A stretch of DNA of 64,000 nt from Haliotis rufescens (taxonomy: Eukaryota), in contig NW_025963802.1 of the NCBI RefSeq assembly GCF_023055435.1, forward strand, positions 30,256,001-30,320,000, in the 5' to 3' direction. Under the pieces are notes generated by a model. That model worked only from the letters and a program-made list of their open reading frames with translations, did not search any database and had not been told where the DNA came from. The translations under genes and the position numbers were made by a program. Shown piece by piece: positions 25,299 through 57,723 of the stretch. How positions within the stretch are numbered: the stretch's first letter is position 1; every line of letters begins with the position of its first letter.

Positions 25299-26292
25299 TT
25301 AATAATGATTTTGTCGAAATAAATAGTGATTGAGATGGTGTGGGCCGACAATACTATTTTTTGGTTTGATTGTATAGACAGCCTCCATTCCAAACTTCAC
25401 GTGATCCCCGAGGTGACAGTGCACCAGCCACGTGCCGGGGTTATCAGTGAACATCTCCACCGTCTCGGTTGTGGAAGGAAATACCTCTATGACGTCATTG
25501 CGGTGAGCCTTGTCCGTGCGGTGTATAAACGTCTGACCGTGAAAGTGGACAGGATGAATGTCAGCAGAACTGCCGAGACCAAGAATGTGCCAGGCAACAG
25601 ACTCTCCTTCCTTCATGGTTAATCCACGAACATTCCCGTATATAAGTCCATTGATGGAATGCATCTGATTGCTGTCTCTAAAATCGGCATCGCCAACGTT
25701 AGTTCTATTTGGTGCGAACGTCGCAGCATTTTCCTGCAAATAATGGCTATCGTTTTCGTTGAATATTACAAAAAGAAGAGCAAATTCGCGATTTATCTTG
25801 TCGGTGCGTTTACCATAAGCATTCAACTGCCCCCGTCTACAGATAACGAGGGGTCCGACCAGTCCACTATTAATATCCTTGGTCGAATCAACGGACGAAT
25901 GATACAACCAGCTGATGCAGTTGGGGTCATTTTTGCCAGGACCGGACCTCTTTGGTACCTCCCAATGGTACACGTATGTCTGACCTGGTGGCACCGCATT
26001 GTCTCCAGTGAAGGTACTGCCATCTTGATACTGTGCTCCTTCGTTGGCCTTGTTGTAAAATAATCCCTCGGGTGTAATCGAGTAGGCTCTAGTGGCCAGG
26101 TTCCTGAAGACAACCTCAACGATGTCCCCTACTTCCGCTCGGATAAACGGCCCAAGGGTTCCTAGATGTTCTGTTTCCGGCCCGCGTGGTATTTGTGTTG
26201 TGAAGGTGCTGTCTGTGTATTGACGGTACAAGGCCTTCTTATATTTACTGCCAATGAAATTTGGGCCGCCTTTTATGAACTTGTATCCGTCC
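25299..26292 (-). CDS. MCO-A terminal exon (domains 5-6)
   Basis: HPVHFHG and [12 protein letters not shown] multicopper oxidase signatures; TAA at 25301-25299. Confidence 0.95.
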
Positions 26293-29200
26293 CTGCGATA
26301 CAAAAGGAAGTCATTTAGGACATTCGCAATTTAATTTAAGAAGAAATACTTAGTAACAATTTCCTTTCGCCCAAACTTGGTCCAGATCCACAAAACCTTT
26401 GTAGCGCTACGACTGTAGTAAATATAAAACGTCAATGCAAGAGAATAACCAGTCTTGATTAAAGGCCGAAACAGATTTTATTTGGCGTAAAGGGAAAAAC
26501 TAGTTGTGAAAATCAGTGATTACAGCAGATGTTTAAAGTTATATTAGACTTACGGCTGTCGTTTCGTTACCGCTTTGTTGATGAAGGCTTTGTGCAATGA
26601 GCCTTGGCCACGGTTAACAAGGCACTCGTAGCAATACGACTACGGCCAATGTATTAGCATGGACGTATGCCTGTCGTATCGCTACAAACGCTTTGAAGAT
26701 CGGGATCCATATTACTAGTACAGAAGCACGATACTCACAGTGAGGTGTTGGTCAGGGGCAGTCCAGTGACCAGGTCAACCAGGACTGGGGCGTAGTCCCA
26801 CACAACTTCAACAGCGGCAATGTAGTAACGTCGCACATGACGTCGCTGATGCCCCCACTGCTTGGAGTGGTGTGCACCGCAAGAGAAGACGTCGTACAGA
26901 GCGACCATGCCGTTGGTAAAGTGGAAGTTGGTGCGGCAGTGGACTGACCAGCGACCTGAAGAACATAATACAAATGTGACAAAATGCTTGTTCTGGCTTC
27001 AACGGATTTTCTTGGTGAACATGAACATGGGCGGGAGGTAAGATTTACAAAACAACAATTCAGGATGAAAATAAATTCTTTTCAATATGAAAGATCAAGA
27101 AAAAGCATTTTTCAAAATGTGTTTCTTGCTCCCTGCAATATTAGATAACAAGCACAAGTAATAAACATGATGTGGCCTTAAGACACAACGACCCACATTT
27201 CTTCGCACATTTTTGACAAATGTCATGTGATCGATTTATCAATAACAACAAATATGTTGTTGTTGTGCCTTCATCCGGTTGTATATGCTGTTATTTCATC
27301 ATATTTATCGATATTTATACGTCTGCAGATAAATTGACTTTGCCATTACACAAACAGTCGAATTACTTCTACGCCCGTCTCAGCTCTATATTTTTTACAC
27401 AAGACTCGGTGGCATACCGAGTTTCCGACATACTGACCAACACTGTCCGGAATGGAATGGAGAGTGACCCCGGACCCGGGGATGATGACCTTCCCCTCCA
27501 CGTGGTTGCCGTCCACCTCCAGTGTTTGACCGTTGAAGTTGACGCCGTGGTTGTCCCGGAAAGCCCCCAGGCCAAACAGGTGCCATGTCACGTGATCACC
27601 AACGCACATATCTAGTCCTTGCAGGTTGGCGAATGTTCGGCCATTTATGGCTGAAGTATTAAGGAATCGTGTTAAACAAATGGATTTAATGTGCTGTATG
27701 TTCAACAGTAGCTGCGCTGATGTATTTTAGGGGTAATTCAGACCCTCTTCTGGAGGCCATGTGTCTGTTAGATGTTGTTCGTCTGGAAAGGACTTATGAC
27801 CCATTTCGCATATTCGTTACAGAAGCCAATTGTCGTCATGGTGATACACAATGGATGCTGCCCGTTCTATTGTTGTGGTGATTTACTTTACCATCTGAAT
27901 GTTTGGATATCATCGCCATTTGACACTCTTTACAATCTGCGACATTTGACATCCCTTACTTTCTGCGGCATTTGACTCTATTCACTACCTGCGCCATTGG
28001 ACACCCTTTACAATCCGCGACATTGAACGCGCTTTACTTTCTGTGCATTTGACACCATTTACTCTCTGCGACCGAATACCCCTTAACTATCTGCGCCCCT
28101 GGACACGCTTTTCGTTCCGCGCCCTTGCGTACCCTTTACAATCTGGGTCCTCAGAACCCTTCACTAAATGCGCTCTTCAACTCCCTTAATTATTCGCGCC
28201 CATGACGATATTTACTATCTGTGCCGTTAGGCGATCTGTACTATCTGAGCTCTTGGATACCCTTCACTATCTGCGCCCTTTCTTCTCCCTTCACTATCTG
28301 CGCCCTTTCTTCTCCCTTCACTCTCTGCGCCGTTTCTTTTCCCTTCACTCTCTGCGCCCTTTCTTCTCCCTTCACTCTCTGCGCCCTTTCTTCTCCCTTC
28401 ACTCTCTGCGCCCTTTCTTCTCGCTTCACTCTCTGCACCCTTTCTCCGCCCTTCACTCTCTGCGCCCTTTCTCTTCCCTTCACTATTTGCACCCTTCCTT
28501 CTCCCTTCGTTATCTGCGCCCTTTCTTCTCCCTTCACTATCTGCGCCCTTTCTCCTCCCTTTACTATCTGCGCCCGTTCTTCTCTCGTCAGTATCTGCGC
28601 CCTTTCTTCTCCCTTTACTCTCTGCGCCCTTTCTTTTCGCTTCACTATCTGCGCCCTTTCTTCGCCCTTCACTATCTGCGCCCTTTGTTCTCCCTCCACT
28701 ATCTGCGCCCTTTCTCCGCCCTTCACTATCTGCGCCCTTTCTTTTCCCTTCACTATTTGCACCCTTCCTTCTCCCTTCGTTATCCGCGCACTTTCTTCTC
28801 CCTTCACTATCTGCGCCCTTTCTCCTCCCTTTACTATCTGCGCCCGTTCTTCTCCCGTCAGTACCTGCGCCCTTTCTTTTCCCTTCACTCTCTGCGCCCT
28901 TTCTTCGCCCTTCACTATCTGCACCCTTTCTTTTCCCTTCACTATCTGCGCCCTTTCTCCGCCCTTCACTCTCTGCGCCCTTTCTCTTCCCTTCACTATT
29001 TGCACCCTTCCTTCTCCCTTCGTTATCTGCGCCCTTTCTTCTCCCTTCACTATCTGCGCCCTTTCTTTTCCCTTCACTATCTGCGCCCTTTCTTTTCCCT
29101 TCACTCTCTGCGCCCTTTCTTTTCCCTTCACTATCTGCGCCCTTTCTCCTCCCTTTACTATCTGCGCCCGTTCTTCTCCCGTCAGTTCCTGCGCCCTTTC

Positions 29201-32200
29201 TTTTCCCTTCACTCTCTGCGCCCTTTCTTTTCCCTTCACTCTCTGCGCCCTTTCTTTTCCCTTCACTATCTGCGCCCTTTCTTCGCCCTTCACTATCTGC
29301 GCCCTTTCTTCGCCCTTCACTATCTGCGCCCTTTCCTCTCCCTCCACTATCTGCGCCCTGTCTTTTCCCTTCACTCTCTGCGCCCTTTCTCCTCCCTTTA
29401 CTATCTGCGCCCTTTCTGCGCCCTTCACTCTCGGCGCCCTTTCTTCTCCCTTCAATATCTTTGGCACCTTTCTATTCTTGTTGTCAGATTTATGCGTTGG
29501 TCAGTGACATCCATACAGAATCTCACTTCTTCATGAATCATTATTGTAATTTATTTTTAAGACATATATCACACTCATCTGAGTCCGATAATAGAAGGGA
29601 ATCTTACATACATGATAGCTTTTATAAGAATAGTTATGCTCTTATCTTAACTCACAGAACATGGTGTTTGAGAGTATAAACCCAGAATTGGTCTTGTCGA
29701 CGATTGAGGGATTCAGAGCAAATCTCTGTATGTTCTCGTCAATGTACCAGGACTCGTTCTCGTTCAGGGTGAGGATTAGGAGGAAGAACTCCCGGTCTGT
29801 GGGGGACCCAGTGCTGCTCCAGTGTCCTGGTCCACCCTGCAGGGGTTGGAGGTCAACATGAGTGGGTGAGTCAATAGTGTTGAACGGCGAAAGCACTTAC
29901 ATTCCAGCTACATCACAATTGCCTATAAAACGTTTGTACCAGCAAAACCAGTGACGGAAAACGCGATAAAAAATCTACGACATCGGAACACGATGGCACG
30001 CAATGAGGGCAGACGCCTTCAGAGTCTGACCATCCATTGCAGATGGCTCTTATATTACAACAAGCCTGGGGTCGCTGGGGTACCCCCATTTGACCACAGC
30101 AAGATATGGTTTAGCTCATAGGGGCAGAAATATCCCCAGTATTCCATTGTTTTAAACGTTGTCAGTGTGTTGATGGCAAAAAGTTAAAAGGGACGCAGGT
30201 GGGGTACGTTTGCTGAAGTCTGAGGTGACAGACCAATCTGAATGTGAACCCGTTATTAGCGGATACTGGCAAGTCCACTGAGTCACCGACCAGTCACGTA
30301 GACACTGCACTGCGCTGCACTGCGCTGCACTGCGCTGCACTGCGCTGCACTGCATGAGACGGAAACCACGGCGCGACTACACCATTTTTGACCAAACATG
30401 ATTTTTTTAATCGATTTAATTATAAATATATTAGTGCAATTGGATCGACGTGTTTTAACCGTACATGAACATGTTGAAATAAACATGATTTATTATTTCA
30501 TAACAGTGAAATATTTACACACACTACTTACTCCCTAGCTCACTCACGCACCCACACAATTAATTACTCACTCACTCACGCACCCACTCAATCAATTACT
30601 CGCTCACTTAATTACTTACGAAACTTAAAAAGAAACTTTAAACTGTTATCAACGTCTTATCACTGGCACTGTTGTACTACCCATTCACAAAGAAACGTTC
30701 AGATACATACCTCGGACTTCCAGTCAAAGCTATGTCCCTTCCTACAGATGACCACTGGTCCGATGAGTCCGGTGTACACGTCCTTGACAACGTCCACGGC
30801 GGAGTGATACGTGTACGTGAGACAAGGTGGGTCATCCTCGGTGGGGGCCACGCTGTCGGTCACCTCGAACCTGTACACCACTGTCTCACCAGGTCGTGCG
30901 AACTTACCCACTGTCCCGTTGCCTACACAGACACATAATTATAGAGAATGAGGTTCTTTACCGCCATATAGACAACTATATCGTAAAGGTCTGAATATGG
31001 GTCAGACAAACATTTGTCGAGAGCATGAACAACGATCCACTCGATCCTTATTACTCGGATCCAATGACAAGCATGGGATACCTGGGAAAAAGACAGAATA
31101 GGACTCTCAATCTCAATATATTGATAAATGGATGACTGGTATATCTTATATATCTACATGTGAACACCAATGCTATAGTTGAGATTTAAATGAGCCACAT
31201 CAAACGCATCCAAACACGTCTCCAAACACAATTTACATTCAATCTTTATATCTTCAACATTATGTTGTTAATAAAGAAAAAGAAACATTTCAGTTCCAAA
31301 GGACAATGTTATGTGGAAGGAACATTGCTACATTTAATGTTCCTTTGGGTGCAATCAGTTAAGTCTGGTTTTAACATAAAGCCGATCCAGGGAGTATGTC
31401 AGTTTGTTTGTGGGTTATTGAACCGCCGCACACAGCATTATTCTAGCAATATGACGGCGGTCGGTGAATAATCGAGTCTGGGACAGACAATCCAGTGATT
31501 GACAGTATGAGCATCGATCTATGCAATTGGGATACGTTCACATGATTCAACAAAGTCAGCCAGCCTGACCACCCCATCCCGTTAGTCGCCTCTTACGACA
31601 AGCATGGGTTGCTGAAGACCGGTACCCAAAAGGTATACATTGCAAGAATAACCTGGGTCCGTCCTTTGCATGATGAATAATGAGAGCACAACTGTCTATC
31701 CTGATTTCATGACTCACTGTAAGGGTCTTTTGTGACGAATCCCTCCTGTTCCTTGGGGAAGGTGACTCCGTGGACGTACACGGAGTAGTTGCGGTCGGCT
31801 CTGTTGAGAAAGACTATCTCCACTGTTTCACCGACCTCGGCCTTGATAACAGGACCCAGCAGCCCAAGATGTATCTGAGAAACGAATGACTAGGATCACG
31901 AGACAATGCATTTGAACAATACTAAACCAATGGCATGTACACAAATTGCAAGGTACATGCCATCCCACCTAATAAAGCATCCTTATCAACTGGGGGGCAC
32001 GGGTGGCCCAGTCGTCTAAGGCGCTGCGATTCGCTGTGCAGAGTTGCGTCCCTTGGGCACGCCAGAGACCTATGATTGTGGGTCCGAATCCCGGTTCGCC
32101 CCGATTATGTTTCTAGGTTTGTCAGCACCATACCCGTGCTCATGGGTTCACTGAAGTGGTAAACGTCTGAGACCTGCATCACTTCGGGCTTTCCTCCCAC

Positions 32201-33056
32201 ATTAAGCTGACACGCCGCGATATAACTGGAATACTGTTAAAAGCGGCGTTAAACCCAACTCACTCACTCACACTTATCAACTGACATATCAATGAATCAA
32301 CGAAATGTTGAGTTCCACGGCGATATCCTGGAAACCACCCAACTACAAGAAATACAGAGTGTTGACGTGACGTACCTTGTCTGGAGTCCGGAACTTCTTC
32401 TGCGTGAAGGTGGCGTCGGTATATTCTATGTACAGAGCCTTCACGTACTGACCGCCGATGGTGCTGTTGCCGCGGGTGAAGTAGGTCGATGCCGTGCTGT
32501 CGAGTAGAAAGTGAATGTGATTTTGCATGTTGTTCCGTGTATAAAAATTCCAACTCATGCTCACGCTTTGGTAAATACACTGGCACCGAAGTTTGCTGTT
32601 TGCGAAGTATCGTCCCTAAGTCGCATCAGAATCAGCTAATTGTTGTTCGAAACGATGATCGCCGGCATAAATTTCATCACCATACCCGTTCACACTGATT
32701 TCACTGAAGGGCACACATCTACACCCCTTTCATATCATATTTGTTATTCAGATAATTGTTTACATATTAACATGTACTGTCGTATTTCTCACTTCAGTTT
32801 CATGCCTCTACACTTATACCAGACTCCTTCTAACTAGATTTCCGGAGAGCGGAAAGTCGCATCATACGAAAAGACGTTTAAAGATGGTACTTGTTGTTAC
32901 CCTGCCTGTCGCGCGGATATAATGCGCTCAAACAAGGACTGGTCGGTTCGGAGTCAGTATACTGTGTCTGAGTGGGGTATTCATGTTAAACTGAGGCATG
33001 GTATCTCAGTGGGCCAGCACTATAAAATCGGCATCAGTGCAGACGTAAACAAGCAG

Positions 33057-33092
<36 letters not shown>

Positions 33093-36000
33093 CGCTATAT
33101 AAGTGCAAAATCTTGGACGCGGTGTTAAACTCCATTTCACCACACCTCAGCACCTTCTTATAAGTCTTAGAAAAAGATATATTCCATCTCCTGCCTCACC
33201 TGTTGGGGTTCGTCAGCGACCCTCCAAAGTACAGGTCCTGGCCAGACGGACCGTAATCCCACACCACCTTCTCTGCTGCGATGAAGTACCGCTTGACTGG
33301 CCGGATGTCATCGTGGTAAGGGAGGAAACTCCCGGAATGTCCATCATGAATAGATAATCCAGGCAAATGGTCACGTGACAGGAAGTCACTGGCGGAATAG
33401 TAAGGCGACAGAGAACCGTAACCGCCTTTCTGTCGTGGTTTAATGAGGACGTATGCTTGCATGCCATCTATAACAATAGTACCTGGGTCTTAGTCTGATT
33501 ACACAGTGGCTCATTCTGAACGTCATTCCGGTCAAGTAAACAGCTTAGAGATCTTTACATGTATTCAATCATACATATATGAAGAGAGGGTGAATGGTTT
33601 TGTTTGGCTGAAGGCAGCAAAATTATAGCTATAGTATTACATCCTGTAACAACGGGAACCAGTGGTTGACAGCATGAGCAACGTATGACGTCACATCGTA
33701 ACCCATCGATCCCCATTAGTCCGTTCTTACAGCAAGGGTTCAGGAATCTTTCCGTCATTTAATCCTTTAAATATCATATAATGTATAATTTTCTACAATA
33801 TATCGCATCCATAATAAGACCCTGTTAGTCCAGACTCCGTTATATCAGAAACTAAACATTTTAGACAATTACTGATTTTGAGGTCCACATCATCTCCCCG
33901 AGGCAATGGAGTTAACTGACTGTAAAGCTCCAGTTAGGACTGTTATAGTCACTTAACTCCCTTGCCTCGGGAAGATGAGTCCACATATACTGAAAGGGAT
34001 AGTTTAATGTACCCACGGTGTGGATTAACTGGGTTTTAGTGTATGTAATTAATGTTTGTGACATTAAATATCGAAACGGTCATGTATATCATGTGGAGAT
34101 TTCCCATCATATCTGCATATGTCCATCTCATTAAGTGAAACCTCATTTATCCGGATGGCACCGTTCCCGGTGAAATCGCCAGGTACATGAATTGTCAAAT
34201 TAACAAATCAGTGGTATGTAGACTATAATAAAGTCTGTCCTATTACTACTGACAGACGTTCCCAATAAGAATCGTTCGGAAGACGGGTTCCCTGATTAAC
34301 GGTGTCTGGAATAGGGAGGACACACTGTATATCCCTCCACCAGGTTGTGAATCTCCTTATATATCAATACACTGATGCTGTTGGTGATGCTGTTATCAAC
34401 GTCTGTGCAAGATATACGTTGTATGTAAGGTGTGGAGGGACAAGTATTAAAATGAACTAACTTACACTAAGAATTAAAAAATAATATTAGGTATCGCCTG
34501 GGCGAATTACTCACTCCTGTACCAGGTCGAGATTCTGGACGCAAAGAGCCAGACACCTGGATTTTCGGGTATCATCAGCGCTGACCGGAACGTGGCGGGA
34601 TAAAACGTGATTGTGTTCATTCTGAAACACGTCATACAATAGTAGAAATATTCAATACTCATGACGTAGATTGTGAAGTGATCGTACAGGCAAATACATG
34701 TACATCGATATCTGACATAGACAAAAATAAATAAAGCAAAAATACTGTCGAAAAAATGCGACATATAGTCATTTTCATTAACAATGATACAAATATCGAG
34801 TGAGTGAGTGTGTGCGGCTGTACGCCGCTTTCAGTTATACTTAAGTAATATTACAGAGGTCGGGTGGCCACAAGAAATGGGCTTCACATATTGGCTTACC
34901 CACCACCTTACTAGGAATATCATATAATATTACTATCCCTTTTATAGTTTGGGCTGTCAGAAAGGGTCATGGGAGCATTTGATTTGGGGTACCTAAAATT
35001 ATGGAATATCTAAATTTAGATTAAATTAATTAAAATTAAAATTGAAATGATGTAATGTTTGTAATTAAAATATTTTAAAGATCTCCAAGTTCGATGCAAC
35101 ATTCGTTTCCACGTGAGTAATAGTTAAAGTTACTAGTTCTTATCAGATCCAAGTATGATACCAAATATATTTTATACCAATTTGAATTTATATGTATTTG
35201 TGAACAGAACATTTTATGACAGCGTAATTCTATGTGTGCAGTGCACTATTTTATATGTATTTTAAGGGCAATATAAATAATGACAGACATAATTCAACCC
35301 TGTCAATTGTGTCTAAGTTCGTATTCTGACCACTGGTCACAGCATGGTCATAAATGCCACGGCTTATGTGACACACCCTGAAACAGTGAAACAGTGGGCG
35401 CCCACATACATCTCCTGGACAGACACTCTAGACGGAGGGTCACCTCGGTCATATTACAAGCTGGGGCTGTTTATGGTGTAAACTGATCGTTACTGTTGTG
35501 TTGAACACTCAACAAGGGGCTGTGATTCTCATTGTTGTTGGGCCTCAGGGAAGGTGCTGCGCACATTTAAATACTTCAGTATAACATATTAAACTTGGGT
35601 TCATGTGAAACCCATTCTTGGCGTACCAATCGTGATACTGTTAAGAGCAGCGTAAATCCCTATTCCCTCATTTAGAGATGACAAAGACGCAGACGACGAC
35701 GATGATGACGACGACGATAATGATGATGATGATTATTGTTATCATTATTATTATCATCATTATTATTATTATCATCACTTTACTGCTGATTAGAATGATG
35801 TTTCGCCTATCATGATAAAAATCATGTTCTTTGATTTCGTGAGTGAATGAATCTGTTGTTTACTTGCACTGTCAGCAATATTCCAGTTATATATCGGCGA
35901 TTTGGAAATAACAGAACAAGCGCAAGAACAACGATCCACGTAGTCGGGATACGAAGACATGCAATTAGCCGTGACATAGAGCCTGGCAACACGATCCTAT

Positions 36001-37443: not shown

Positions 37444-37474
<31 letters not shown>

Positions 37475-41069: not shown

Positions 41070-41212
41070 ATTGACTGTCAACTGAGACTCGACAAAACTA
41101 AATTGTTTGTCCGAAACAAACCAAATCGCAAAGATCTGTGTATAAGTACTTACAACATGATGCGCGCGAGGAAGTAGGGTGGTAGAGCTTGGTGTTCAAT
41201 ATTCCCAGCTCC

Positions 41213-41219
41213 TTATATA
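41213..41219 (-). promoter_or_regulatory. Putative TATA box of MCO-A
   Basis: TATATAA about 145 nt upstream of the ATG at 41069; a possible short 5'UTR intron starts GTAAGT at 41153. Confidence 0.4.
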
Positions 41220-42021: not shown

Positions 42022-42186
42022 NNNNNNNNNNNNNNNNNNNNNNNNNNNNNNNNNNNNNNNNNNNNNNNNNNNNNNNNNNNNNNNNNNNNNNNNNNNNNNN
42101 NNNNNNNNNNNNNNNNNNNNNNNNNNNNNNNNNNNNNNNNNNNNNNNNNNNNNNNNNNNNNNNNNNNNNNNNNNNNNNNNNNNNNN
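42022..42186. other. Assembly gap (N run)
   Basis: N bases. Confidence 1.
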
Positions 42187-46967: not shown

Positions 46968-47201
46968 GCATACACTTTTATGCTCATGAAAGAACATTAA
47001 ATTATGAATACTGTCGTATGGGACACTTGATAACATGATGAAAACGATTTTTTAGTTCACAGCTAAACTAGCACTTCATGTAAACATCACATGGTAAGAA
47101 ATATTATGGGATGCCAAATCCGGCGCCACATTAATTGTCTCTTCGGACTTTCCTCCCCCATTAAATAGACACGACAAAATGCGGCGCTAAGCCCAACTCA
47201 C

Positions 47202-48162: not shown

Positions 48163-51100
48163 CTGAAAAATAAGTGAAAAGCATTTGGGAGACGGTTCTA
48201 GAAGCGGACGTTAAATCACACAGCTTGCTTGTGCTTGTGTGTGTACAGTGAAACACTTCTAATCCAAGGCAGGTAAGAATTTACACCTCACTCAAACAAT
48301 ATTCAAGATATACAACGTTGTCCTGTAAATAATCGAGTCTGGACCAGGCAAATCAGTGATTGATATCATGAGCAACGTACCACGCCGTTGGGGTATGATG
48401 ATTAGATTTTAATCGTGAACAGTAGATCAACATCTTTTATATCGCAATATAGGTGCATATTTCTAAAGATAAAAGATGCACATTTCAAATACAATATGAT
48501 TCCAGTGATAAATTCTAATATATATGTACATATTATAGATATTCCCAACCCATTAAAAAAAATATGTTTAAACTAATCATATGGTTTCAGTTACACTTAC
48601 AAAGAAGGATCTGTCAAGTTCTCCCCTGTCACGAGATCTCGCAGGATCGGAGCGTAGTCCCAGTCTACCTCCTCTGCAGCAATGAAGTACTTCCGAGTTT
48701 TGCTGCCTACGAAAGGCTTCTGCTGGGCCCCACACGATTTGACGTCATACAGAGCAACCATCCCTGTCTTCAAATGGAAGTTAGTCCGGCATACAAGTGC
48801 CCATTTACCTAGGAATGAGATATAACAGGGTCAAACATTGCTGAAATATATTTGCTTGTAACAAACGCAACTGGCTGCAACCATGTTGATTCTGAGAGGA
48901 TATGACATGATAATCTCATCAAGTCTTATTTTCATCAATATTGCCAAATATATCAACAAATGAATCTGTATTTGAATGGTGTGCCTTATGATTCCAGGCA
49001 TATAAATTCATGTCAATGGCATGGACCAATCTTCTAGACTTGATTGATACAGTAATTATCGATTTTCTTTCGTGTTCCTTACCATAGGGGAATACAAATA
49101 AATACATAAATATACAAGGTCCCAAGCTTTCGGCCTCTCGGCTTTCATCAGGCGCACTCTTTTGGTTTAGCACTACATTATTGGAGATGGTCTCATTGCT
49201 GTAATTTTTCATTACGTAATTATTTTTTAAAATGATATCACATGAACTTTGTTGGAATTTGCAATCTTTTAATTGGGATGACAACTTAGTTAAGTATATC
49301 ACATTGTTAATATAACCAGCTCCCAATAAACCCGTGACTGACACTGACAAACGAGCCACTGACCAACTTTATCCGGTGTTGACAACAGAGTAACCGCTGA
49401 GCCAGGGATGATTTCTTTGCCCTCCACTTTTGTCCCCAGATAATCCAGCGTTTGTCCGTTGAAGTTCACCCCGTGCATGTCAAACCATCCCCCAAAGCCG
49501 ATGATGTGCCAGGCAACTTCATTCCCCTGGCACATCTCCAGACCCTCCAGGTTGCCAAACATTCGCCCATTGATGGCTGTCATGAAGAAAGGAATATGCA
49601 ATAGGCATAAATCGAACACAACTTTCCTAGTATCACGATAGATTTTTTTATTTATGACTTCCACACATGAACAACATATATACATCTCTGCTCTGACAAA
49701 TTAACGTCCTTCTGATACATAAAATTATCAAACATATTCAACGATGGCACAGGTAAACGATAACCGTTCATATCAATAGATATATACAAATATTTACTTG
49801 TGTGTAATGGAATCAATATGTCGAAAATAATGCATTTTTACAACAGTAACTACATCTTCCCGACGCAAGAGAGTTAACTGACTATAAAGACCAGTTTCCA
49901 CCCTTGCCGAAATAGGCTGGAATTCCTGGGCTCGATCTTGGCGCCACCAGTGGATGCTATGAGTTATGTCCCTTCTGAGTTTCTCCTGTGGACCAATCCG
50001 ATTCAATCACTTGCATTTGTTTCGAACAAAATGGCGCCGCCCAGACAAGACGATCTGATCGATAATCAAGGTCTATATTGTGATAAAACGGGTCTTACAT
50101 CGCGCATCAAATCACGCGAGCACCTTGATTAAAAACGTGAAAAAGTTTGGAAAATATCTGTAGACAACGAGTTGGCGGGGCACATGCTTTGCAAATCCTG
50201 CAATCGACCGACAGTTTACGAACCGGATTTCGATTCGATTTCGTTGCGAGATTTTGATTGGACTATGCATAGACTCGTTAGTCCACAATACCAGCCTATA
50301 GCTAGCTCGGCAAGGCAGGAAACTGGACTTTTAAAGTCAGTTAACTCTCTTGCCTCGGGAACATGCAGCTACTACTACCTATACCACAACTGTCGTCTGG
50401 TTTAGACATTAGACCGAACTAGTATGTCATATATCATTTTAAACACTCATTCGTCGATTACAGCTCTACGAGGACTGACACTGCTTTTTGTCACCTACCA
50501 TGTTTTCGGTTTGAGCCGAAGAAGGCAGGGTCATCCTTGTTGACGGACGCTGGGTCCGTTGTGAAGGTCTGGATGTTGTGGTCAATATACCATGACCTGT
50601 TCTCGTCCACTGTCATGAACAAAAGGTACAGGTGGGTCAGACGACTGAACCAGGTGGGTCGTCTCCTTCTGAACAAGAACCCAGACTGAAAGGAAAAGGC
50701 GTTTGTGAGTGAGCAGGTGTGGTTCTGAACCGTTTTTAGCAACACTCACAACCATATCACTTCGCGGGCACCAAGAATGACCATGGGTTTTACATATAAT
50801 TGTAATTTTGGGGGGAATGGAACATGGTCTCCTTGTTGACTCATCAAGCTTCAACCAACTGACTACCCTCCCTTTCCCAAAAGACATTTGCAGTACATGT
50901 CACCCATCATGTTTTCTGGTGCCCGTTGGGCAACAACAATTTACTCAATTTGGATAAAAAGTATATACGGCCAGTTGTAAAAGGATTTGTTTCAATATGT
51001 TATGTCAGTCTCAGTTAGTAAAGAAATTATGTTGATAGAAATATGAAGAAATTAGTGGTCTGGTATGAAAATGTCAGTAACCGGCTCACCGATTGTTTTT

Positions 51101-54100
51101 TAAGTTGGCCTCTATTGCAGACGAGGAGAGGACCAAGGAGGCCTGAGTGCACGTCTCTGATTGGGTCAACCGCGGAGTGATACGTGTGCGTCAAACACTC
51201 GAGGTCATCTCGTGTAGGTCCCATAATCTGGGGGACCCGGAACTTGTAGGTGATTGTCTCCCCTGGCTGTGCTACTTTCCCCGTCGTCTGATTGCCTGAA
51301 ACGAAAACATGTAAAATGTATACCGTATTGTTATACAGATTCCGACGTGAGAAAGTGAATTTTGTTTCACGCCGCATCATTTCAGCGATATTTTAGTTAG
51401 TTTTTGTCCAATGTGTGGCGATGTCTCTTTTGAATACACAATGCCTTTTGTTTCTCGGACAATCGGGTTATATAATTCAAGTACGTTTTTAGGTATTATT
51501 TAGCGAATAAATATATAACTTGGGATCACATCTGTGTAAGCTCGTGGCGTGTTCACTTTAAGTTGGAGCAAAGTTCGAATAGCACGGTTTGTAGATGGTA
51601 CCGCTTCGATGAAACTTACGAGCAAGGCATGGTTGTGACCGGCCACCACTAAACCAAAGAGCAACGGATCTTAGCAACTAAGGGACGCAACTCTATACAA
51701 TGAACTACGCGTTGAACAACATGGACACTGATTTTGAATGATGCAAATTAAAACTGCTTGAACAATGTCGGATGTTTTAGCGACAAAAGCTCTATACTTA
51801 CTCTTGGGGTTTTTGTAAAGGAAACCTTCATTTTCTTTTGTAAACATAACGCCGTGTGGATATACTGAGTACTGCCTATCGGCGTTATTGCGGAACACGA
51901 TCTCGATTGTCTCCCCTTCCTCGGCTGCAATGACAGGTCCCATGAATCCCAAGTGTTTCTCGTTATCCTCCCGTTGTTTCTTCGTCCGGAAACTATCATC
52001 AGTATATTCCACATACACAGCTTTCTGATACACTCCCCCTATGCGGTCTGGTCCTCGGGTAAAATACTGGCTCGCGGTGCTGAAACATTGAACATTCAAA
52101 CTTGAAATATATGTGATTTTAGGGAGGGATATAGCTAGGCCAAGGTAAAATGCCAATATCCGTTAAATACTATATCATACACTCAACTTATTTATGATGC
52201 ATATCCATCGTGTGGTTAATATTAGAAAAACTGAGCAGAGAAATGCCTCAGTTTCATGTCACGAATTACAAGATCAAGACCCAGACTTAAATTTGGTGAC
52301 AAACCGTTGAGTGCAGACACCTTTTAGGCCGTCATTATACGTGTGTTAAAAACATGTTCTCTTCTTGACGTTAATAACATGAAAGTGCTTACCCTACAGA
52401 ATCATCAGTGAGATTTCCTCCATTGAACAAATCTTTACCGGAAGGACCATAATCCCACTCGATGAGCTCCGCAGCAAGATAGTATTTCCTGTTCCTGGAT
52501 CTGCCGTAGCCCCATGGAAGCCTCGGGGATTCGAACAAACTAACATGTCTCTTCCCACGCCAGCCTCTGCGAGGGTTGACATTCAGGAATGCGTGCATGC
52601 CACCTGAGGATAGTGAGAAATATATCCTTTTTCTAATTGGAAATAAACAATTGCAAACGTCCTTACGTATATGTCGAAGCGACTGACATGTTAAAATACA
52701 CGTACATTGTAAACTATCTTCAGAAAGTGAATGATTCAAAATGGTTTCACACCACAGTATTCCAGCATTATAACGGCGGAGATCACACATCGGGGGACAC
52801 TAGAAATAGTAAGGATTCGAACCAGTCGAACGTTTGTAAACCTACGGACCTTTTCTTCCTGTGTGTTCATACCTATCTTATAGTCTAACCTTATAGTTAG
52901 TGAGTGAGTATGGTTTTACGCCGCTTTGAGCAATATTCCAGCAATATCACTGCGGACACCAGAAATTGGCTTCACACATTGTACCCATGTGGGGAATCGA
53001 ACCCGAGACTTCGTCATGACGATCGAATGCTTTGACCACAAGGCTACCTCACCGCCCCTTAATTTATAACATTTATTTACTGGGGGATAAAATCCATATT
53101 TCCACATTTTTTCCTTGATTAACATCTAAGTATTGGCTGATGCGAATCGACACAGTAAGGAAGGTATTGTAACAAGAATTCCACCTACCGTCGAATGCCT
53201 CGGCGATCCTACTGGACAGCAGCCACGTGCCTGTGTTGATGGGCGTCATACGAGCTGATACAAACGTAGCTGGGTAGAAGGTGACCGTGTCCACTCTGTA
53301 GCAGACCCAGAACATAGGTAATTATGAGTACAGATGGTCAATGTAAGGCCAATATTCTGGGTTTTACTCATAATACTACGGTATGGAACTGAACCTCGTC
53401 AGAATCAGATCAACACGTCACAAGAGAAAGACTAAACCTTAGAATATATCTAAAGGAAAGCTTTGTCACTGGATGGGGAATTCTCACCCCTTACCGTTTT
53501 CGTTTTGGTAGCTTCCTGAAACCACCTTAAGGGCAGTTTGCTCGAGCACATTGACAATTTGATCAATTTTTGTAAATGTTGCTACAGCACTTTGTTTGCT
53601 CACGCAATCTTTAAGATGTATATAAATTGGAGCTGTTAATAATCCACAGCTAACATATAGACAGTGTCTAAGTTCGTTTGTTTGTTGATTGGTGCCGCAG
53701 AGAGAGAAACACTTTTTTAAAGTCTTATGTAATGTTTGTTTGTTTGTTTGTTTGTTTGTTTAACGCCGCACTCAGCACTATTCCAGCTATATAACGGCGT
53801 TCTGTAAATAATCGAGACTGGACCAGTCAATCCAGTGATTGATATTATGAGCATCAACCTACGCAAGTGGGATACGATGACATGCACCAGTCAAGTCACG
53901 GAGCTTGACCACAGTGTCTGGGTCTATCACAAGGCACGAAACACAACGTTTAGTCCAAGACTGGTATTGAATAGACAGTAGAATATAGTCTTTAGTCTTA
54001 TCTTATCGACTTCCATCATTTTTTAGTCATACCACGTACCTGTGGTTTCTGAACGTCAGGACTTGTCCGCTGAAGTGGGCACTCTGAATCCCGGTGTTCA

Positions 54101-57100
54101 GTGAGAGGAAGTGGAAGACGACGTCATCACGCTGTCTCACATCGAGGCCAGGCAGGTTTCCGTACATATAGCCGTTAACGTGGAACAGCAAGTTGGACGT
54201 TTGGAAGGAGCCATCGTTATTGTTGCTGAGGGACAAGCATGCGGAAGGATTGCCACATTTGTCAAGGTTTTGGGAGAGGAGCCAACTCTGTCCTTCGTTC
54301 GTCTGGTCCATGTACAGCACAAATTCTTTGTCAATGTCACGGCGTGTGTTGCCAAAACGAAGCGTTCCTTTAATATATAAAGACATATACTGACGTTTTG
54401 TCCAGCGTCTAGTGTTTAACAAGAGACGTTAAAGCCGCTGGGGACCGACTATTTGTTATGGTATATACATGTATGTTGAAATCCCGAGACAAACATACGT
54501 AAATTCATATATATGTTGAAACCCCGTGATACATGCTAGATTAGGCAGGAATTGGGGATGAATATAAATACTGTTAATAATTATGAGCCTGGAATAATTC
54601 AAATTAGAGAAGTGTAGTTAATAATTATACAATATTTTGTATATCATTTGATATTGATGAAGTAGAACTGCAGCAATATGAGTATTAAACCCTTTTGCAT
54701 GAGTTTGGGTAAAGATTTTGTAAAGAGTTTTGCCCCTTAGTAGTGCCAGGGTCAGCTGATCGTGTGTTCGTTTCCCAATATCCAGACATATGCATGTGTC
54801 AGGCAGTGTCAGCCTTCCCCAAAACAGTAAGCTCATTCTCCATAATATGTAAATGAAACACTGTTTTTGGTGGCGTTATATAAGACTCTGTTGCTGCGAT
54901 CATGCGTACTCACCTTTCTTGCAGGTCATGAGAACGCCGACCAATCCGCTGTCTACATCCTGGACCGGGAACACGTGGGAGTGATAGGCCCAGGCCAGAC
55001 ACCGCGAGTCGTCGCTTGTTGGGGCGAAGTTGGACGTCACCCGCCAGACATATGTGAACGTCTCCCCGGGAGCTACACCGTCATCGGCCTTGTCTGAACC
55101 TGTCGTCGCGTCCACGTAAAGTGCACCTTAAAATGACAAAAACAAATTAACAAAACACAAACATAAAAATAATAATAATAATAATAATGCCTGACTGTGC
55201 CAGGATCACCCAAACTCTCCTTGCTCCATTTATTCATTTTAATCTGTATAATAATCATAATTAGTAGTATTGGTATTTATCATCATCATTATCACCATAA
55301 TAAGTTTTTAAGATATATAACCACTTGGCTTACTCTCCCGCTGAGACCCTGGTTAGACTAAGTATGCAGTATTCCATTGCTTTCGAGTGGCAACTTAATT
55401 GGATCCGGTGGTCAGACTCGTTGCGTGTCACCGAACCCTGACACCGAGAGACGTTGCTCATACTATCAACCACTGGATTTTCCAGTCCACACCAAATTAC
55501 TTTCCATAAGCCGTGAGGTAACCGCAATATTGATGACAGCGGGGATATACAAAGAAACAAACAAGGCAGCACTGCCATCACTACATCAATGACAACATAC
55601 TACTACATCTGAAAAAAACATCATCTCTGTGACAAGGAAAACGATCATAGCTTCAACAATAAAACTAACCTTCGGCATCTTTGTTGTACTGGACTCCGTG
55701 TGGATGGACACTAAAATTTCGCCCTGCAGTCATCGCCATATTCTTGAAGTAGACTTTGATAGTGTCTCCAACCTCGGCCCTCAGGATTGGGCCAACGTAT
55801 CCCAGACTTGCTGCATGGGGACGCTGCTTCGTGAAACTCCCATCCGTGAATTCCCGATATACTATTTTCCTATACACACTTCCTATACGGTCCTGTCCCG
55901 GCTTGAGATACGTGTCAAAATCACTGGGAAAAAGAATAAATAGATTTGATACTGGTATATACCAGGTATATCCCAAAAGGTTCCATGGTAGAATAGGTCT
56001 TCAGCAACCCATGCTTGCCGTAAAAGGCGACTATGCATGTAAGAGGCGACTAAAGGGATCGGGTGATCAGGCTCGCTGACTCGGTTGATGCATGTCATCC
56101 CAAATGCGTGGGTCGATGCTCATGATGTCAATCACTGGATCGCTGGTCGAGACTCGATTATTTAAATACCGCCATCATACTGATGGCATAGACAAGCATA
56201 GTTTGTTGGCACCTATATTCGTTTACCCGGAATCCTCACCGATCCACTCAATCGGGTTACATTTACACATCACCAACCAAGCCACCAAACCTGGACCCCT
56301 GACCATTTACTCCCCTCGCTGAGGATTCAAACCTGGAATCCCGACGGAGTAATGTCATGGTAGAATAGGGAATGATGCACCTCCCTCAGTGAATACAAGT
56401 TTAATAACGGCACTGTTTACAGTTGTTAGATATTCCACAGCGTGTGATCATGAAAGAGAGCAGTTGACAATAAAAGTGATCATACAGTTCAGAAATCAAT
56501 TAAATACTCAGTTTTCCACATGTAATATACCTTGTCTGTGGTTACTTAATCCTCAATGTCTACAGGTCACGTGACTGCTCATTCTCGGGATAACGTGAAA
56601 CATGAAGGAAGATTTCGGGTTTGTGGGAGGTCAGATTTCCTTATACCTAATTGATTGCTAATAGGAGTTAAATAGTAGACTCACTCGGCCACGTTACGAC
56701 GGTCGATATTGTATTGTATTTACAGACCGCCGTCATATGGCTGGAATAATGCTTAGTGCAGCGTTAAACAACAAACAAACAAATTATCTGCAAAGGGGGT
56801 GTTCAAGCTTACGACCAACGTCAATACTTCATAATGTAGGTTTTGTATACACTACGTTCAATAAATTTTGAACTGAAAAAAAGGATTCCCCTCTTTAAGG
56901 AAAGTTTCTGAGAACACACGATACACATGACACGATGTGCAAGTTCAACGAGGGATTACACAAATCAAATATCTGCCTTGAGAGAAAAAACAATAATTTA
57001 ATTTTCCACGTTTTATTCGGTAATATAAACTGCCGAGCAGAAGAAAATATACACTTGAAAATTGGATTTTACCAACATATTACATTGTTGGTTTGTTGTT

Positions 57101-57723
57101 TAGCGCCGCACTCAGCAATATTCCAGCTTTATGGCGGCGGTCTGTAAATAATCGAGTCTGGACCAGCAAATCCAGTGATTGATATCATGAGCATCGATCC
57201 ACGCACTTGGGATCGATGACATGCATCAACCAAGCCTGACCAAGCCTGACCACCCGATCCCGTTAGTCGCCTTTTACCCAAATATTACAAACATAATAAA
57301 ACGTTACTAAGCTTGAAACAGTCACCGAAGCACTACTAACTGTTCAAAACAGAACTATAAAACCCGTATCAAATCATCGCGATAAAATAACCATTTTTTG
57401 TTCGTTAATTTTTTGCCACCGTTAAACCCGATTGTGTTTTTTCTTTTGTCCAGCATGTTATATGTAAATCTAGCAACACAATAAAGTTCGAAAGCAACAA
57501 AACAAGGACAATTAAAAAATAATATCCTTAGGTACAAGCGACAGAACATGTATTAAATATTAAATATTTTACATTCGAAAAATACCTACCTGTTGTTATT
57601 CACCATGTTTCCATTGGGCGCATAGTTCCAGTTAATTTCAACAGCGCCAATGCAGTACTCGCGCATTCGAGCATTCGCTAAATTAAATAGAGTCAATACG
57701 CAAAACAAAACGAAAAACTTCAT
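47202..57723 (-). CDS. Hephaestin/ceruloplasmin-like six-domain multicopper oxidase, paralog B (secreted, 1099 aa, 12 coding exons)
   Basis: Exons: 57723-57590, 55923-55670, 55126-54914, 54367-54040, 53295-53189, 52603-52393, 52079-51802, 51295-51090, 50685-50499, 49576-49364, 48808-48601, 48162-47202. All introns are GT-AG, phases are consistent and the total is 3300 nt. Signal peptide MKFFVLFCVLTLFNLANA. Motifs SVHPHG, YHSH, DMHGVNFNG, CRTNFHLKTGM, YHPVHFHG, HCHFSEHVKSGM. Confidence 0.93.
48601..48808 (-). CDS. MCO-B exon 11
   Basis: GKWALVCRTNFHLKTGM...RKYFIAAEEVDWDYAP. Confidence 0.92.
49364..49576 (-). CDS. MCO-B exon 10
   Basis: INGRMFGNLEGLEMC...[12 protein letters not shown]. Confidence 0.92.
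49853..50365. mobile_element. Non-autonomous DNA transposon with ~45-bp TIRs
   Basis: CATCTTCCCGACGCAAGAGAGTTAACTGACTATAAAGACCAGTTTCC at the left end is the reverse complement of the right end. Confidence 0.8.
50499..50685 (-). CDS. MCO-B exon 9
   Basis: LFMTVDENRSWYIDHNI...FFGSNRKH. Confidence 0.9.
51090..51295 (-). CDS. MCO-B exon 8
   Basis: QPGETITYKF...CLTHTYHSAVD...GLLGPLLVC. Confidence 0.92.
51802..52079 (-). CDS. MCO-B exon 7 (equals A exons 7+8)
   Basis: RIGGVYQKAVYVEYTD...HLGFMGPVIAAEEG; 278 nt = 121+157. Confidence 0.92.
52393..52603 (-). CDS. MCO-B exon 6 (basic linker)
   Basis: GMHAFLNV...RKYYLAAELIEWDYGPSG; GG|GTAAGC donor. Confidence 0.88.
53189..53295 (-). CDS. MCO-B exon 5
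   Basis: VDTVTFYPATFVSARMTPINTGTWLLSSRIAEAFD. Confidence 0.9.
54040..54367 (-). CDS. MCO-B exon 4
   Basis: RRDIDKEFVLY...[11 protein letters not shown]...GIQSAHFSGQ. Confidence 0.9.
54914..55126 (-). CDS. MCO-B exon 3
   Basis: VAPGETFTYVW...CLAWAYHSH...GLVGVLMTCKKG. Confidence 0.93.
55670..55923 (-). CDS. MCO-B exon 2
   Basis: RIGSVYRKIVYREFTD...GPILRAEVGD...SVHPHG. Confidence 0.93.
55987..56670 (+). repeat. Left arm of ~680-bp inverted duplication
   Basis: Near-identical reverse complement of 62032-62716; spurious ORFs 56389+ and 62127- differ by one residue. Confidence 0.92.
57590..57723 (-). CDS. MCO-B coding exon 1 (signal peptide)
   Basis: MKFFVLFCVLTLFNLANARMREYCIGAVEINWNYAP; AG|GTAGGT donor. 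An upstream acceptor near 57748 implies a 5'UTR exon. Confidence 0.9.

What the first reader, a model, noticed from the sequence alone, without database searches (positions are those of the whole stretch)
25299..57723. Two 'hephaestin-like' oxidases that have lost the ferroxidase iron-binding residues: candidate six-domain oxidases of organic substrates
Seen: the trinuclear ligands (HxH in domains 1 and 6, HCH) and the domain-4/6 type-1 H/C/H/M ligands are intact, so O2 reduction should work. Known: human ceruloplasmin binds Fe(II) through acidic/His residues in FxESNxMH, GMGNExDxH and CxxxDH (E272/E935/H940/D1025 and E597/H602/D684/E971). By eye alignment, domain 4 reads FILSNTMF + CRTNFH in A and FFGSNRKH + CRTNFH in B, so Asp becomes Phe in both. 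The partner loops are [27 protein letters not shown] and GFGGWFDMH, where Glu is replaced by small or aromatic residues. Domain 6 is partly retained in A ([14 protein letters not shown]) but largely lost in B (FRASNSMN). Inference: hydrophobic, aromatic pockets suit phenolic, catechol, amine or pigment substrates (laccase-like), and A and B may differ in substrate.
Basis: partly seen in the sequence, partly recalled or inferred. Interest (0 to 1): 0.78.

Follow-up and report, generated by a model that had tools for sequence, protein, structure and literature searches.

The report
Abalone ceruloplasmin-like oxidases without iron sites
Two neighbouring red-abalone genes encode copper oxidases built like the blood iron-oxidising enzyme ceruloplasmin, but the pockets that hold iron have been rebuilt, so their database label of ferroxidase is probably wrong.

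Summary
Two intact minus-strand genes, A (25299-41069) and B (47202-57723), encode secreted six-domain ceruloplasmin-type multicopper oxidases. All eight trinuclear-cluster His are present, as are the type-1 copper ligands of domains 4 and 6. The domain-2 type-1 site is lost.

Mapped on human ceruloplasmin numbering:
- Domain-4 Fe(II) site: 0 of 4 ligands in A and 1 of 4 in B.
- Domain-6 site: 3 of 4 in A (Glu to Asp, and no Glu272 equivalent) and 1 of 4 in B (Asp to Glu).

Both N gaps lie outside coding sequence, one in an intron and one upstream of A.

B is transcribed and spliced in 4 of 4 runs laid. A has no RNA evidence here.

The loss is not local decay. B has well-supported caenogastropod orthologs with the same replacement residues, and unionid bivalves share them. 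The same genome, Haliotis rufescens, holds 11 loci of this family, of which 4 or 5 keep canonical residues.

That the substrate is organic remains an untested inference.

Verdict: a new variant of a known kind, of moderate interest. A first-reader note (s1-812883) covers the same stretch. Nothing like it was noted on other DNA.

The parts
25299..41069 (-). Gene A: 13 coding exons, ATG at 41069, stop at 25299-25301. Secreted six-domain multicopper oxidase.
   Evidence: tblastn of its own terminal exon and of full-length relatives covers all six domains in order in open frames. Canonical splice signals stand where homology ends. ATG and hydrophobic N-terminus. No RNA evidence was obtained for A.
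40912..41069 (-). A exon 1: start codon, signal-peptide-like N-terminus, start of domain 1.
   Evidence: ATG position and a GTGAGT donor after 40912.
38296..38480 (.). Assembly gap 1, inside the intron between A exons 2 and 3.
   Evidence: The flanking exons are contiguous on two relatives, so no coding sequence is missing.
42022..42186 (.). Assembly gap 2, between the genes, 953 nt upstream of A's ATG.
36535..36570 (-). A domain-2 loop, the Glu272 equivalent. It aligns with a two-column gap and has no acidic residue.
   Evidence: Coordinates worked out by hand from the translation.
29656..29836 (-). A exon 10 (domain 4, first part). E597 equivalent is Leu (29672-29674). H602 equivalent is Phe (29657-29659).
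   Evidence: PDB alignment. Junction read from DNA. Same phase as the RNA-proven junction of B.
27438..27650 (-). A exon 11 (domain 4, middle), with the type-1 His and domain 4's own loop.
   Evidence: Its 213 nt equal the length of B's RNA-defined exon.
26739..26955 (-). A exon 12 (end of domain 4, start of domain 5). Type-1 Cys, His and Met present. D684 equivalent is Phe (26924-26926).
25302..26292 (-). A exon 13 (domains 5 and 6). E935 equivalent is Asp (25674-25676). H940 is His (25659-25661). E971 equivalent is Ser (25566-25568). D1025 is Asp (25404-25406). Four trinuclear His and the type-1 His, Cys, His, Met are present.
   Evidence: Pfam Cu-oxidase_2 61.2 bits, Cu-oxidase_3 41.5 bits. 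Acceptor site.
47202..57723 (-). Gene B: 12 coding exons, ATG at 57723, stop at 47202-47204. The 3' UTR reaches at least 47100.
   Evidence: The last six exons are defined by spliced transcripts and adjusted to GT-AG.
57590..57723 (-). B exon 1: start codon and signal-peptide-like N-terminus.
54075..54110 (-). B domain-2 loop, the Glu272 equivalent. It aligns with a two-column gap and has no acidic residue.
   Evidence: Coordinates worked out by hand.
50499..50685 (-). B exon 9 (domain 4, first part). E597 equivalent is Gly (50515-50517). H602 is His (50500-50502).
49364..49576 (-). B exon 10 (domain 4, middle), with the type-1 His.
48601..48808 (-). B exon 11 (end of domain 4, start of domain 5). 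D684 equivalent is Phe (48777-48779).
47205..48162 (-). B exon 12 (domains 5 and 6). E935 equivalent is Ala (47547-47549). H940 equivalent is Asn (47532-47534). E971 equivalent is Thr (47439-47441). D1025 equivalent is Glu (47277-47279). Copper ligands intact.
   Evidence: Cu-oxidase_2 76.4 bits. AlphaFold model pLDDT 88.6. Foldseek TM 0.91-0.93 to ceruloplasmin.

Best explanation
WHAT THEY ARE. A and B are functional genes for soluble, secreted six-cupredoxin-domain multicopper oxidases of the ceruloplasmin lineage.

SHOWN.
- O2 can be reduced at the trinuclear copper cluster between domains 1 and 6, because all eight His are present.
- Electrons can enter through type-1 copper in domain 6 and in domain 4, because His, Cys, His and Met are present in both.
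- The domain-2 type-1 site is gone.
- In ceruloplasmin, Fe(II) docks beside each type-1 His on two Glu, one Asp and one His. Here that quartet is replaced.
  - Domain 4 reads Leu, Phe, Phe, Ser in A and Gly, His, Phe, Thr in B.
  - Domain 6 reads Asp, His, Asp with no Glu272 equivalent in A, and Ala, Asn, Glu with none in B.
- The replacement residues recur in orthologs across gastropods and in unionid bivalves.

INFERRED.
- The sites were rebuilt for another reductant rather than decaying.
- High-affinity ceruloplasmin-type Fe(II) oxidation is lost at domain 4 in both proteins and at domain 6 in B.
- The true substrate is most likely a small organic reductant that sits in a less acidic, more aromatic pocket and passes electrons to the type-1 His. 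Candidates are phenolic or catecholic compounds, ascorbate-like compounds or pigments.
- Iron oxidation in the animal is left to paralogs that keep the quartet.
For: - Fold and family: E = 3.8e-252 and 1.7e-257 to ceruloplasmin chains. Pfam families score above their cut-offs. The model of B's domains 5-6 has pLDDT 88.6 and TM 0.91-0.93 to ceruloplasmin.
- Copper ligands are present and iron ligands replaced.
- The ceruloplasmin ligand lists match the passages read in PMC3738974.
- Genes intact: every homologous piece lies in an open frame with canonical splice signals.
- B is spliced and transcribed in 4 of 4 runs laid, three of organism A and one of organism D.
- B against organism D shows 9 synonymous and 13 non-synonymous changes, pN/pS 0.41, no stop in 683 codons, and no change at a site residue.
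- Conservation across A, B and 11 database relatives with an intact domain-4 type-1 site: Asp684 equivalent in 0 of 13 (Phe in 8), Glu971 equivalent in 0 of 13, and Asn at the His940 position in 10 of 13. Glu272 equivalent is present in 0 of 12 that have a domain-2 unit.
- B groups with the Nucella, Littorina and Batillaria proteins at 99/95 support.
- The quartet is the common state. It is fully present in 30 of 72 terminal units of the 150 representatives, and in the 3 of 3 bacterial two-domain relatives I checked.
- Same genome: 11 loci have a domain-6 piece. Five keep the Glu, His, Asp triad and four of those also keep Glu971. Both genes on contig C190 also keep the Glu272 equivalent.
Against: - No activity, substrate or tissue was tested. 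The runs are coded and carry no tissue label.
- A keeps 3 of 4 domain-6 ligands, so it may still bind Fe(II).
- Multicopper oxidases often oxidise Fe(II) slowly without a dedicated site (general knowledge, recalled).
- The tools give no residue-level 3D comparison, so carboxylates brought in from elsewhere in the fold cannot be excluded.
- pN/pS of 0.41 rests on only 22 changes and is not strongly purifying.
- A has no RNA evidence and no well-supported ortholog. Its place in the careful tree is unresolved.
- The 18-row mollusc group is not supported by bootstrap. The AU test merely fails to reject it (p = 0.40), and I named the group after seeing a tree.
Confidence: 0.55

Rival explanations
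1. They are still ferroxidases. Fe(II) would be oxidised at A's partly kept domain-6 site (Asp, His, Asp), or by outer-sphere transfer at lower affinity in both proteins. This would serve iron handling in hard tissues such as shell or radula, as the mollusc literature assumes from the name.
For: - A keeps 3 of 4 domain-6 ligands. B keeps His602 and a Glu at the 1025 position.
- In the passages read, hephaestin-like proteins of chiton radula and coral skeleton are taken to be ferroxidases.
- Yeast Fet3p manages with three acidic residues (recalled, not from a call).
Against: - Domain 4 has 0 of 4 ligands in A and 1 of 4 in B, and B's domain 6 has 1 of 4.
- The Glu272 equivalent is absent in both. 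PMC3738974 describes this residue as predicted to take part in electron transfer to the type-1 copper.
- The closest A-type fragments have Phe, Phe, Ser, Ser and Phe, Phe, Asn, Ile.
- Canonical paralogs exist in the same genome.
- The papers I saw argue from the name, not from residues or assays.
Confidence: 0.2
2. They oxidise another inorganic ion, such as Cu(I) or Mn(II), rather than iron or an organic compound.
For: - Several bacterial two-domain relatives of the terminal exon are labelled manganese oxidase by their source.
- Ceruloplasmin has cuprous oxidase activity (recalled).
Against: - Cation substrates also need carboxylate or Met-rich ligands.
- The rebuilt sites lost carboxylates and gained Phe, Leu, Gly and Trp, and they are not Met-rich.
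- The three bacterial relatives I checked keep the Glu, His, Glu, Asp quartet.
Confidence: 0.07
3. Their main role is not catalytic. They would act as a copper carrier or store, or as a matrix component of shell or radula, with the oxidase machinery kept as a by-product.
For: - Hephaestin-like proteins are found occluded in biominerals (passages).
- Coagulation factors V and VIII show that this fold can take non-oxidase roles.
Against: - All 8 trinuclear His and both type-1 sites are conserved in A, B and their relatives. A carrier or a matrix protein would not need them.
- In the main text of the Haliotis laevigata shell proteome paper, the terms multicopper, ceruloplasmin, copper and ferroxidase occur 0 times. 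I did not see its supplements.
Confidence: 0.08
4. One or both genes are decaying duplicates or assembly artefacts.
For: - Two N gaps lie within the span.
- A has no RNA evidence here.
- pN/pS is 0.41 for B.
Against: - Both gaps lie outside coding sequence.
- There are no in-frame stops or frame breaks in any homologous piece.
- B is spliced in 4 of 4 runs, with 0 mismatches in three of them.
- The copper ligands are intact, and the replacement residues are conserved between classes of molluscs.
Confidence: 0.03

Closest known systems
Vertebrate ceruloplasmin (PDB 1KCW, 4ENZ, 5N0K)
   Same: - Soluble and secreted, with six cupredoxin domains.
- Trinuclear cluster between domains 1 and 6, and type-1 copper in domains 4 and 6.
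- 43-44% identity over domains 5-6, and the model superposes at TM 0.91-0.93.
   Different: - Ceruloplasmin has Glu, His, Asp, Glu quartets beside the type-1 copper of domains 4 and 6, and a type-1 copper in domain 2.
- A and B lack most of the quartets and the domain-2 copper site.
Hephaestin and HEPHL1 (zyklopen), the names under which the mollusc relatives found here are filed (for example P0016, P0018, P0077)
   Same: Same six-domain family and the same copper ligands.
   Different: - The vertebrate proteins keep the Glu597, His602 and Glu971 equivalents. The Mugil HEPHL1 also keeps Asp684, while the horse hephaestin aligns a Ser there.
- They carry a C-terminal membrane anchor (recalled, and passages's paper).
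- A and B end without a hydrophobic segment.
Mollusc orthologs P0160, P0159 (Littorina), P0014 (Nucella), P0055 (Batillaria), P0190, P0006/P0151 (unionid mussels), P0300 (98% identical to B)
   Same: - Phe (Met in Nucella) at the Asp684 position, Ser at Glu971, and Asn at His940 (Phe in P0190).
- Domain-2 loop with an alignment gap at the Glu272 position, where a domain-2 unit is available.
- Lost domain-2 type-1 Cys.
   Different: - They come from other species.
- A differs from all of them by keeping His940 and having Phe at His602.
- None has been characterised as far as my searches show.
Coagulation factors V and VIII (A domains)
   Same: A six-domain ceruloplasmin fold that changed function.
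   Different: Those proteins lost the copper and oxidase machinery and gained B and C domains. A and B keep the machinery and changed only the substrate sites.
Insect three-domain multicopper oxidases sorted into laccase or ferroxidase types by their iron-binding residues (Anopheles MCO3, PMC3313952; search listing and abstract only)
   Same: The same reasoning: absence of iron-binding residues predicts a laccase-type substrate.
   Different: Three-domain enzymes of a different lineage. I did not read that paper's residue analysis.

Membership tests
Six-domain ceruloplasmin-type multicopper oxidase | Three tandem two-domain units homologous to ceruloplasmin | tested here: met
   Each terminal exon matches all three ceruloplasmin units. 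Exon pieces for domains 1 to 6 lie in order in both genes.
Six-domain ceruloplasmin-type multicopper oxidase | Eight His of the trinuclear cluster, four in domain 1 and four in domain 6 | tested here: met
   Domain 6. Domain 1: the ORF translations set against the 1kcw alignment, compared by eye.
Six-domain ceruloplasmin-type multicopper oxidase | Type-1 copper ligands (His, Cys, His, Met) in domains 4 and 6 | tested here: met
Six-domain ceruloplasmin-type multicopper oxidase | Type-1 copper site in domain 2 | tested here: not met
   The type-1 His position is Gln in A and B. Ser stands in place of the Cys by my reading of the open segments. Orthologs also have Ser at the Cys position. The family tolerates this loss in some members (passage of PMC3600357).
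Six-domain ceruloplasmin-type multicopper oxidase | Pfam Cu-oxidase_2 and Cu-oxidase_3 above the gathering score | tested here: met
   61.2 and 41.5 bits for A, 76.4 and 43.5 bits for B, against cut-offs of 20.4 and 21.
Multicopper ferroxidase (ceruloplasmin, hephaestin, HEPHL1; EC 1.16.3.1) | Domain-6 Fe(II) quartet: Glu272, Glu935, His940, Asp1025 | tested here: not met
   A has none, Asp, His, Asp. B has none, Ala, Asn, Glu.
Multicopper ferroxidase (ceruloplasmin, hephaestin, HEPHL1; EC 1.16.3.1) | Domain-4 Fe(II) quartet: Glu597, His602, Asp684, Glu971 | tested here: not met
   A has Leu, Phe, Phe, Ser. B has Gly, His, Phe, Thr.
Multicopper ferroxidase (ceruloplasmin, hephaestin, HEPHL1; EC 1.16.3.1) | Low-Km Fe(II) oxidase activity | not testable with these tools
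   Needs purified protein.
Hephaestin proper | C-terminal transmembrane anchor | tested here: not met
   The highest 19-residue hydropathy window in the terminal exons is 1.0-1.2 and lies far from the C-terminus. Both proteins end in short polar tails.
Laccase-like oxidase of organic substrates (a functional class, not a lineage) | Turnover of phenols or diamines, with a hydrophobic pocket beside the type-1 His | not testable with these tools
   The residues at the former iron site are hydrophobic or aromatic. No geometry or activity is available.

The most novel reading that the evidence does not exclude
A and B belong to an old, mollusc-wide subfamily of secreted six-domain copper oxidases. 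The subfamily has a conserved signature: Phe in place of Asp684, Ser in place of Glu971, Asn in place of His940, and a shortened domain-2 loop. It would have swapped the cation site of ceruloplasmin for an aromatic, less acidic pocket, and would work on organic reductants in hard-tissue or pigment chemistry, such as cross-linking of shell, periostracum or radula, or oxidation of ascorbate or bilin-type pigments. If so, at least part of the "hephaestin-like ferroxidases" reported from mollusc biomineral and radula studies are not ferroxidases.
Probability: 0.3. Interest if true: 0.65.

Novelty: new variant of a known kind. Interest (0 to 1): 0.5.

Why it matters
- Databases name the mollusc relatives found here hephaestin-like or ferroxidase HEPHL1-like. 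In the passages I read, papers on shells, radulae and coral skeletons build iron-handling hypotheses on that name.
- A conserved subfamily that keeps the O2-reducing machinery but has rebuilt both substrate sites makes those hypotheses testable. It may overturn them for this subfamily.
- It also offers a natural experiment on how substrate choice is set in six-domain multicopper oxidases. One genome holds canonical and rebuilt paralogs side by side.
- The claim can be tested directly with recombinant protein.

Tried and rejected
1. Assembly artefact or pseudogene: rejected. See the gap test, the open frames and the RNA evidence.

2. Recent tandem duplication: rejected. A and B are only 62-64% identical in domains 5-6. 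B is closer to caenogastropod proteins than to A.

3. Full-length abalone models of A and B.
   - (P0014, residues 559-1243) returned mostly vertebrate proteins and no Haliotis model of A or B.
   - (A's terminal exon) returned no identical fragment.
   - So I had no ready-made full-length protein of the window, and I handed no spliced model of my own to any search or fold tool.

4. One clade for all rebuilt mollusc proteins.
   - The quick trees gave SH-aLRT 85 and 90.
   - The careful tree left the backbone unresolved.
   - The AU test gave p = 0.40. I therefore claim orthology only for B.

5. Structure.
   - I folded only B's domains 5-6 and ran one Foldseek search.

6. Literature.
   - Eight searches and passages from seven papers turned up no description of lost iron ligands in mollusc six-domain oxidases.
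   - I did not ask for supplements. Tissue and proteome tables there may name these proteins, for example in the chiton radula paper and the abalone shell proteome paper.

7. Tissue of expression: not obtainable, because the run names are coded.

Full report
WHAT IS THERE.
The window is G000:C24:30256001-30320000 of a 1.33-Gb genome. The genome is Haliotis rufescens. Protein P0077 is 100% identical to own-genome locus L006, carries that species' name, and sits on a contig of 2,461,003 bases, exactly the length of G000 contig C577.

Two genes lie head to tail on the minus strand.
- Gene A runs from the ATG at 41069 to the stop at 25299-25301 in 13 coding exons.
- Gene B runs from the ATG at 57723 to the stop at 47202-47204 in 12 coding exons.
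- A has one extra intron in domain 3.

Each terminal exon encodes domains 5 and 6 in one piece.
- They match ceruloplasmin chains at E = 3.8e-252 (A) and 1.7e-257 (B), each with three matched stretches.
- Pfam Cu-oxidase_2 and Cu-oxidase_3 score above their cut-offs.
- A model of B's domains 5-6 (pLDDT 88.6, pTM 0.87) superposes on rat and human ceruloplasmin at TM 0.91-0.93 and rmsd 1.4-2.3 Å over 309-318 columns.

Both proteins start with a hydrophobic signal-like segment and end without one. They are therefore soluble, secreted, ceruloplasmin-like proteins rather than membrane-anchored hephaestins.

THE GAPS.
There are two N runs, 38296-38480 and 42022-42186.
- The first lies in the intron between A's exons 2 and 3. 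These exons cover neighbouring residues of two full-length relatives with nothing missing and have canonical splice signals.
- The second lies 953 nt upstream of A's ATG.
- No coding conclusion depends on either. I did not try to fill them.

THE OBSERVATION.
On mature human numbering:

Domain-4 site (Glu597, His602, Asp684, Glu971)
- A: Leu, Phe, Phe, Ser.
- B: Gly, His, Phe, Thr.

Domain-6 site (Glu272, Glu935, His940, Asp1025)
- A: none, Asp, His, Asp.
- B: none, Ala, Asn, Glu.

The His602 position lies on a phase-1 splice junction. I read it from the DNA in both genes. For B the junction is proven by transcripts.

The eight trinuclear His and the type-1 ligands of domains 4 and 6 are intact. 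The domain-2 type-1 site is lost, as first-reader note s1-812883 also says.

Two corrections apply.
2. In A and B it aligns with a two-column gap against A's domain-6 loop and has no acidic residue.

ARE THE GENES ALIVE?
Nineteen of the 24 listed runs, from 7 studies, hold at least half of the sampled words of B's terminal exon.

I laid four runs on 47100-52200.
- Each contains a contig that joins 47100-48161, 48600-48806, 49362-49576, 50499-50685 and 51090-51294/5 without the introns. Two of them (X6, X11) run on into 51801-52080. In X1 and X3 that exon lies on separate contigs.
- Three runs of organism A have 0 mismatches. One run of organism D has a few.
- After shifting ambiguous bases, all junctions are GT-AG.

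Against organism D, B shows 9 synonymous and 13 non-synonymous changes in 683 codons. pN/pS is 0.41, there is no stop, and no change falls at a site residue. The counts are small.

A's last four exons have the same phases as B's, and one has the same length, all with canonical signals.

IS THE LOSS LOCAL OR OLD?
The search of 1.84 billion representatives found 4,583 relatives. Among the best 150, 72 terminal units bind the trinuclear cluster.
- 30 of the 72 have all four canonical residues at the Glu935, His940, Glu971 and Asp1025 positions.
- 36 of the 72 have Glu, His and Asp.
- The vertebrate ceruloplasmin and HEPHL1 checked and an octopus protein are canonical in domains 4 and 6. The horse hephaestin aligns Asp, His, Ser, Asp at the domain-4 positions and keeps Glu935, His940 and Asp1025.
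- The 3 of 3 bacterial two-domain relatives I checked are canonical too.

I compared A, B and 11 mollusc proteins that have an intact domain-4 type-1 site. These are unionids, Batillaria, Nucella, Littorina, Gigantopelta, Lottia, two Patella and two unnamed proteins.
- Asp684 equivalent: present in 0 of 13, with Phe in 8.
- Glu971 equivalent: present in 0 of 13, with Ser in 9.
- His940 position: Asn in 10 of 13.
- Glu597 equivalent: present in 3 of 13.
- Glu272 equivalent: present in 0 of the 12 that have a domain-2 unit (names).

The stretch from the domain-4 type-1 Cys to the type-1 His is identical in A, B and four gastropod proteins (P0055, P0159, P0160, P0190), and differs by one residue in the unionids.

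In the careful tree, B groups with the caenogastropod proteins at 99/95 support. A is unresolved. An 18-row mollusc group seen in the quick trees is neither supported by bootstrap nor rejected by the AU test, p = 0.40.

Other close relatives:
- P0300 is 98% identical to B and carries the same site residues.
- P0299 is 74% identical to A and has Phe, Phe, Ser, Ser at the four domain-6-unit positions.
- P0301 is 68% identical to A and has Phe, Phe, Asn, Ile.
- So A's Asp, His, Asp is not a conserved feature of its nearest relatives.

THE REST OF THE FAMILY IN THIS GENOME.
Eleven loci carry a domain-6 piece.
- Five keep Glu935, His940 and Asp1025. Four of these also keep Glu971.
- The two genes on contig C190 also have the Glu272 equivalent.
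- The other six, A and B among them, do not keep the triad.
- Canonical ferroxidase-type paralogs are therefore available to the animal.

HOW IT MOST LIKELY WORKS.
Shown:
- The oxidase machinery is intact, with a trinuclear cluster and two type-1 coppers.
- The cation sites are rebuilt.
- The new residues are conserved, and B is expressed.

Inferred:
- The proteins still reduce O2 but no longer bind Fe(II) in the ceruloplasmin manner at domain 4. B does not do so at domain 6 either.
- The pockets lost three or four carboxylates and gained Phe, Leu, Gly or Trp. This suits an uncharged or anionic organic reductant better than a cation.

Which compound is the substrate remains open. I put 0.55 on this reading, 0.2 on residual ferroxidase function (mainly through A's domain 6), and less on other metal ions, a non-catalytic role or decay.

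COMPARISON WITH WHAT IS KNOWN.
A and B are members of the six-domain ceruloplasmin lineage. They fail both residue tests for the ferroxidase class and the anchor test for hephaestin.

In eight searches and the passages of seven papers I found no description of this loss in molluscs.
- The 2013 phylogeny of six-domain proteins holds no occurrence of the mollusc terms I searched, and the passages shown deal with copper sites, not iron ligands.
- The mollusc and coral papers use the ferroxidase name without checking residues.

VERDICT.
- This is a new variant of a known kind, with interest 0.5.

Noticed in passing
window 28260-29460: A 27-nt minisatellite of 44.5 copies (86% matches) lies inside A's intron between the first and middle domain-4 exons. 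It causes the strong GC and AT skew of the 28001-30000 bin.
   Followed up: partly
window 43367-44143 and 46552-46967: A 66-nt tandem repeat of 11.8 copies (96% matches) and a 135-nt repeat of 3 copies lie between genes A and B.
   Followed up: no
window 48297-48467 and 49836-50519: Two stretches in B's introns collect contig depths in the hundreds to tens of thousands, far above the neighbouring bins, in all four transcriptome-like runs, with many odd joints. They look like copies of a very abundant, transcribed repeat family, perhaps the SINE-like family of note s1-812813.
   Followed up: partly
G000:C24:34.47-34.89 Mb; C190:6.64-6.70 Mb; C577:1.07-1.08 Mb: The genome holds at least 11 loci of six-domain ceruloplasmin-type genes. 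One cluster lies about 4.2 Mb from the window on the same contig. Some loci have canonical iron ligands and some have other replacements, for example Asn, His, Gln, Asn.
   Followed up: partly
proteins P0324, P0331, P0337 and many others: Bacterial and metagenomic two-domain multicopper oxidases of about 360-390 residues are 45-51% identical to A's domains 5-6. The three I checked keep the Glu, His, Glu, Asp quartet. Some are labelled manganese oxidase or hephaestin by their source.
   Followed up: partly
window 31715-32500 against 51802-52080: A splits the first part of domain 3 into two exons where B has one. An intron was gained or lost since the duplication.
   Followed up: no
window 37372-37477: A GT/GC-rich microsatellite starts directly after the donor of A's exon 3 and reads as an open frame on both strands.
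   Followed up: no
window 19822-20349 (minus strand): An ORF with a signal-like start is followed by an acidic low-complexity stretch, downstream of gene A. It is the gene of first-reader note s1-812884 and resembles shell-matrix-type proteins.
   Followed up: no
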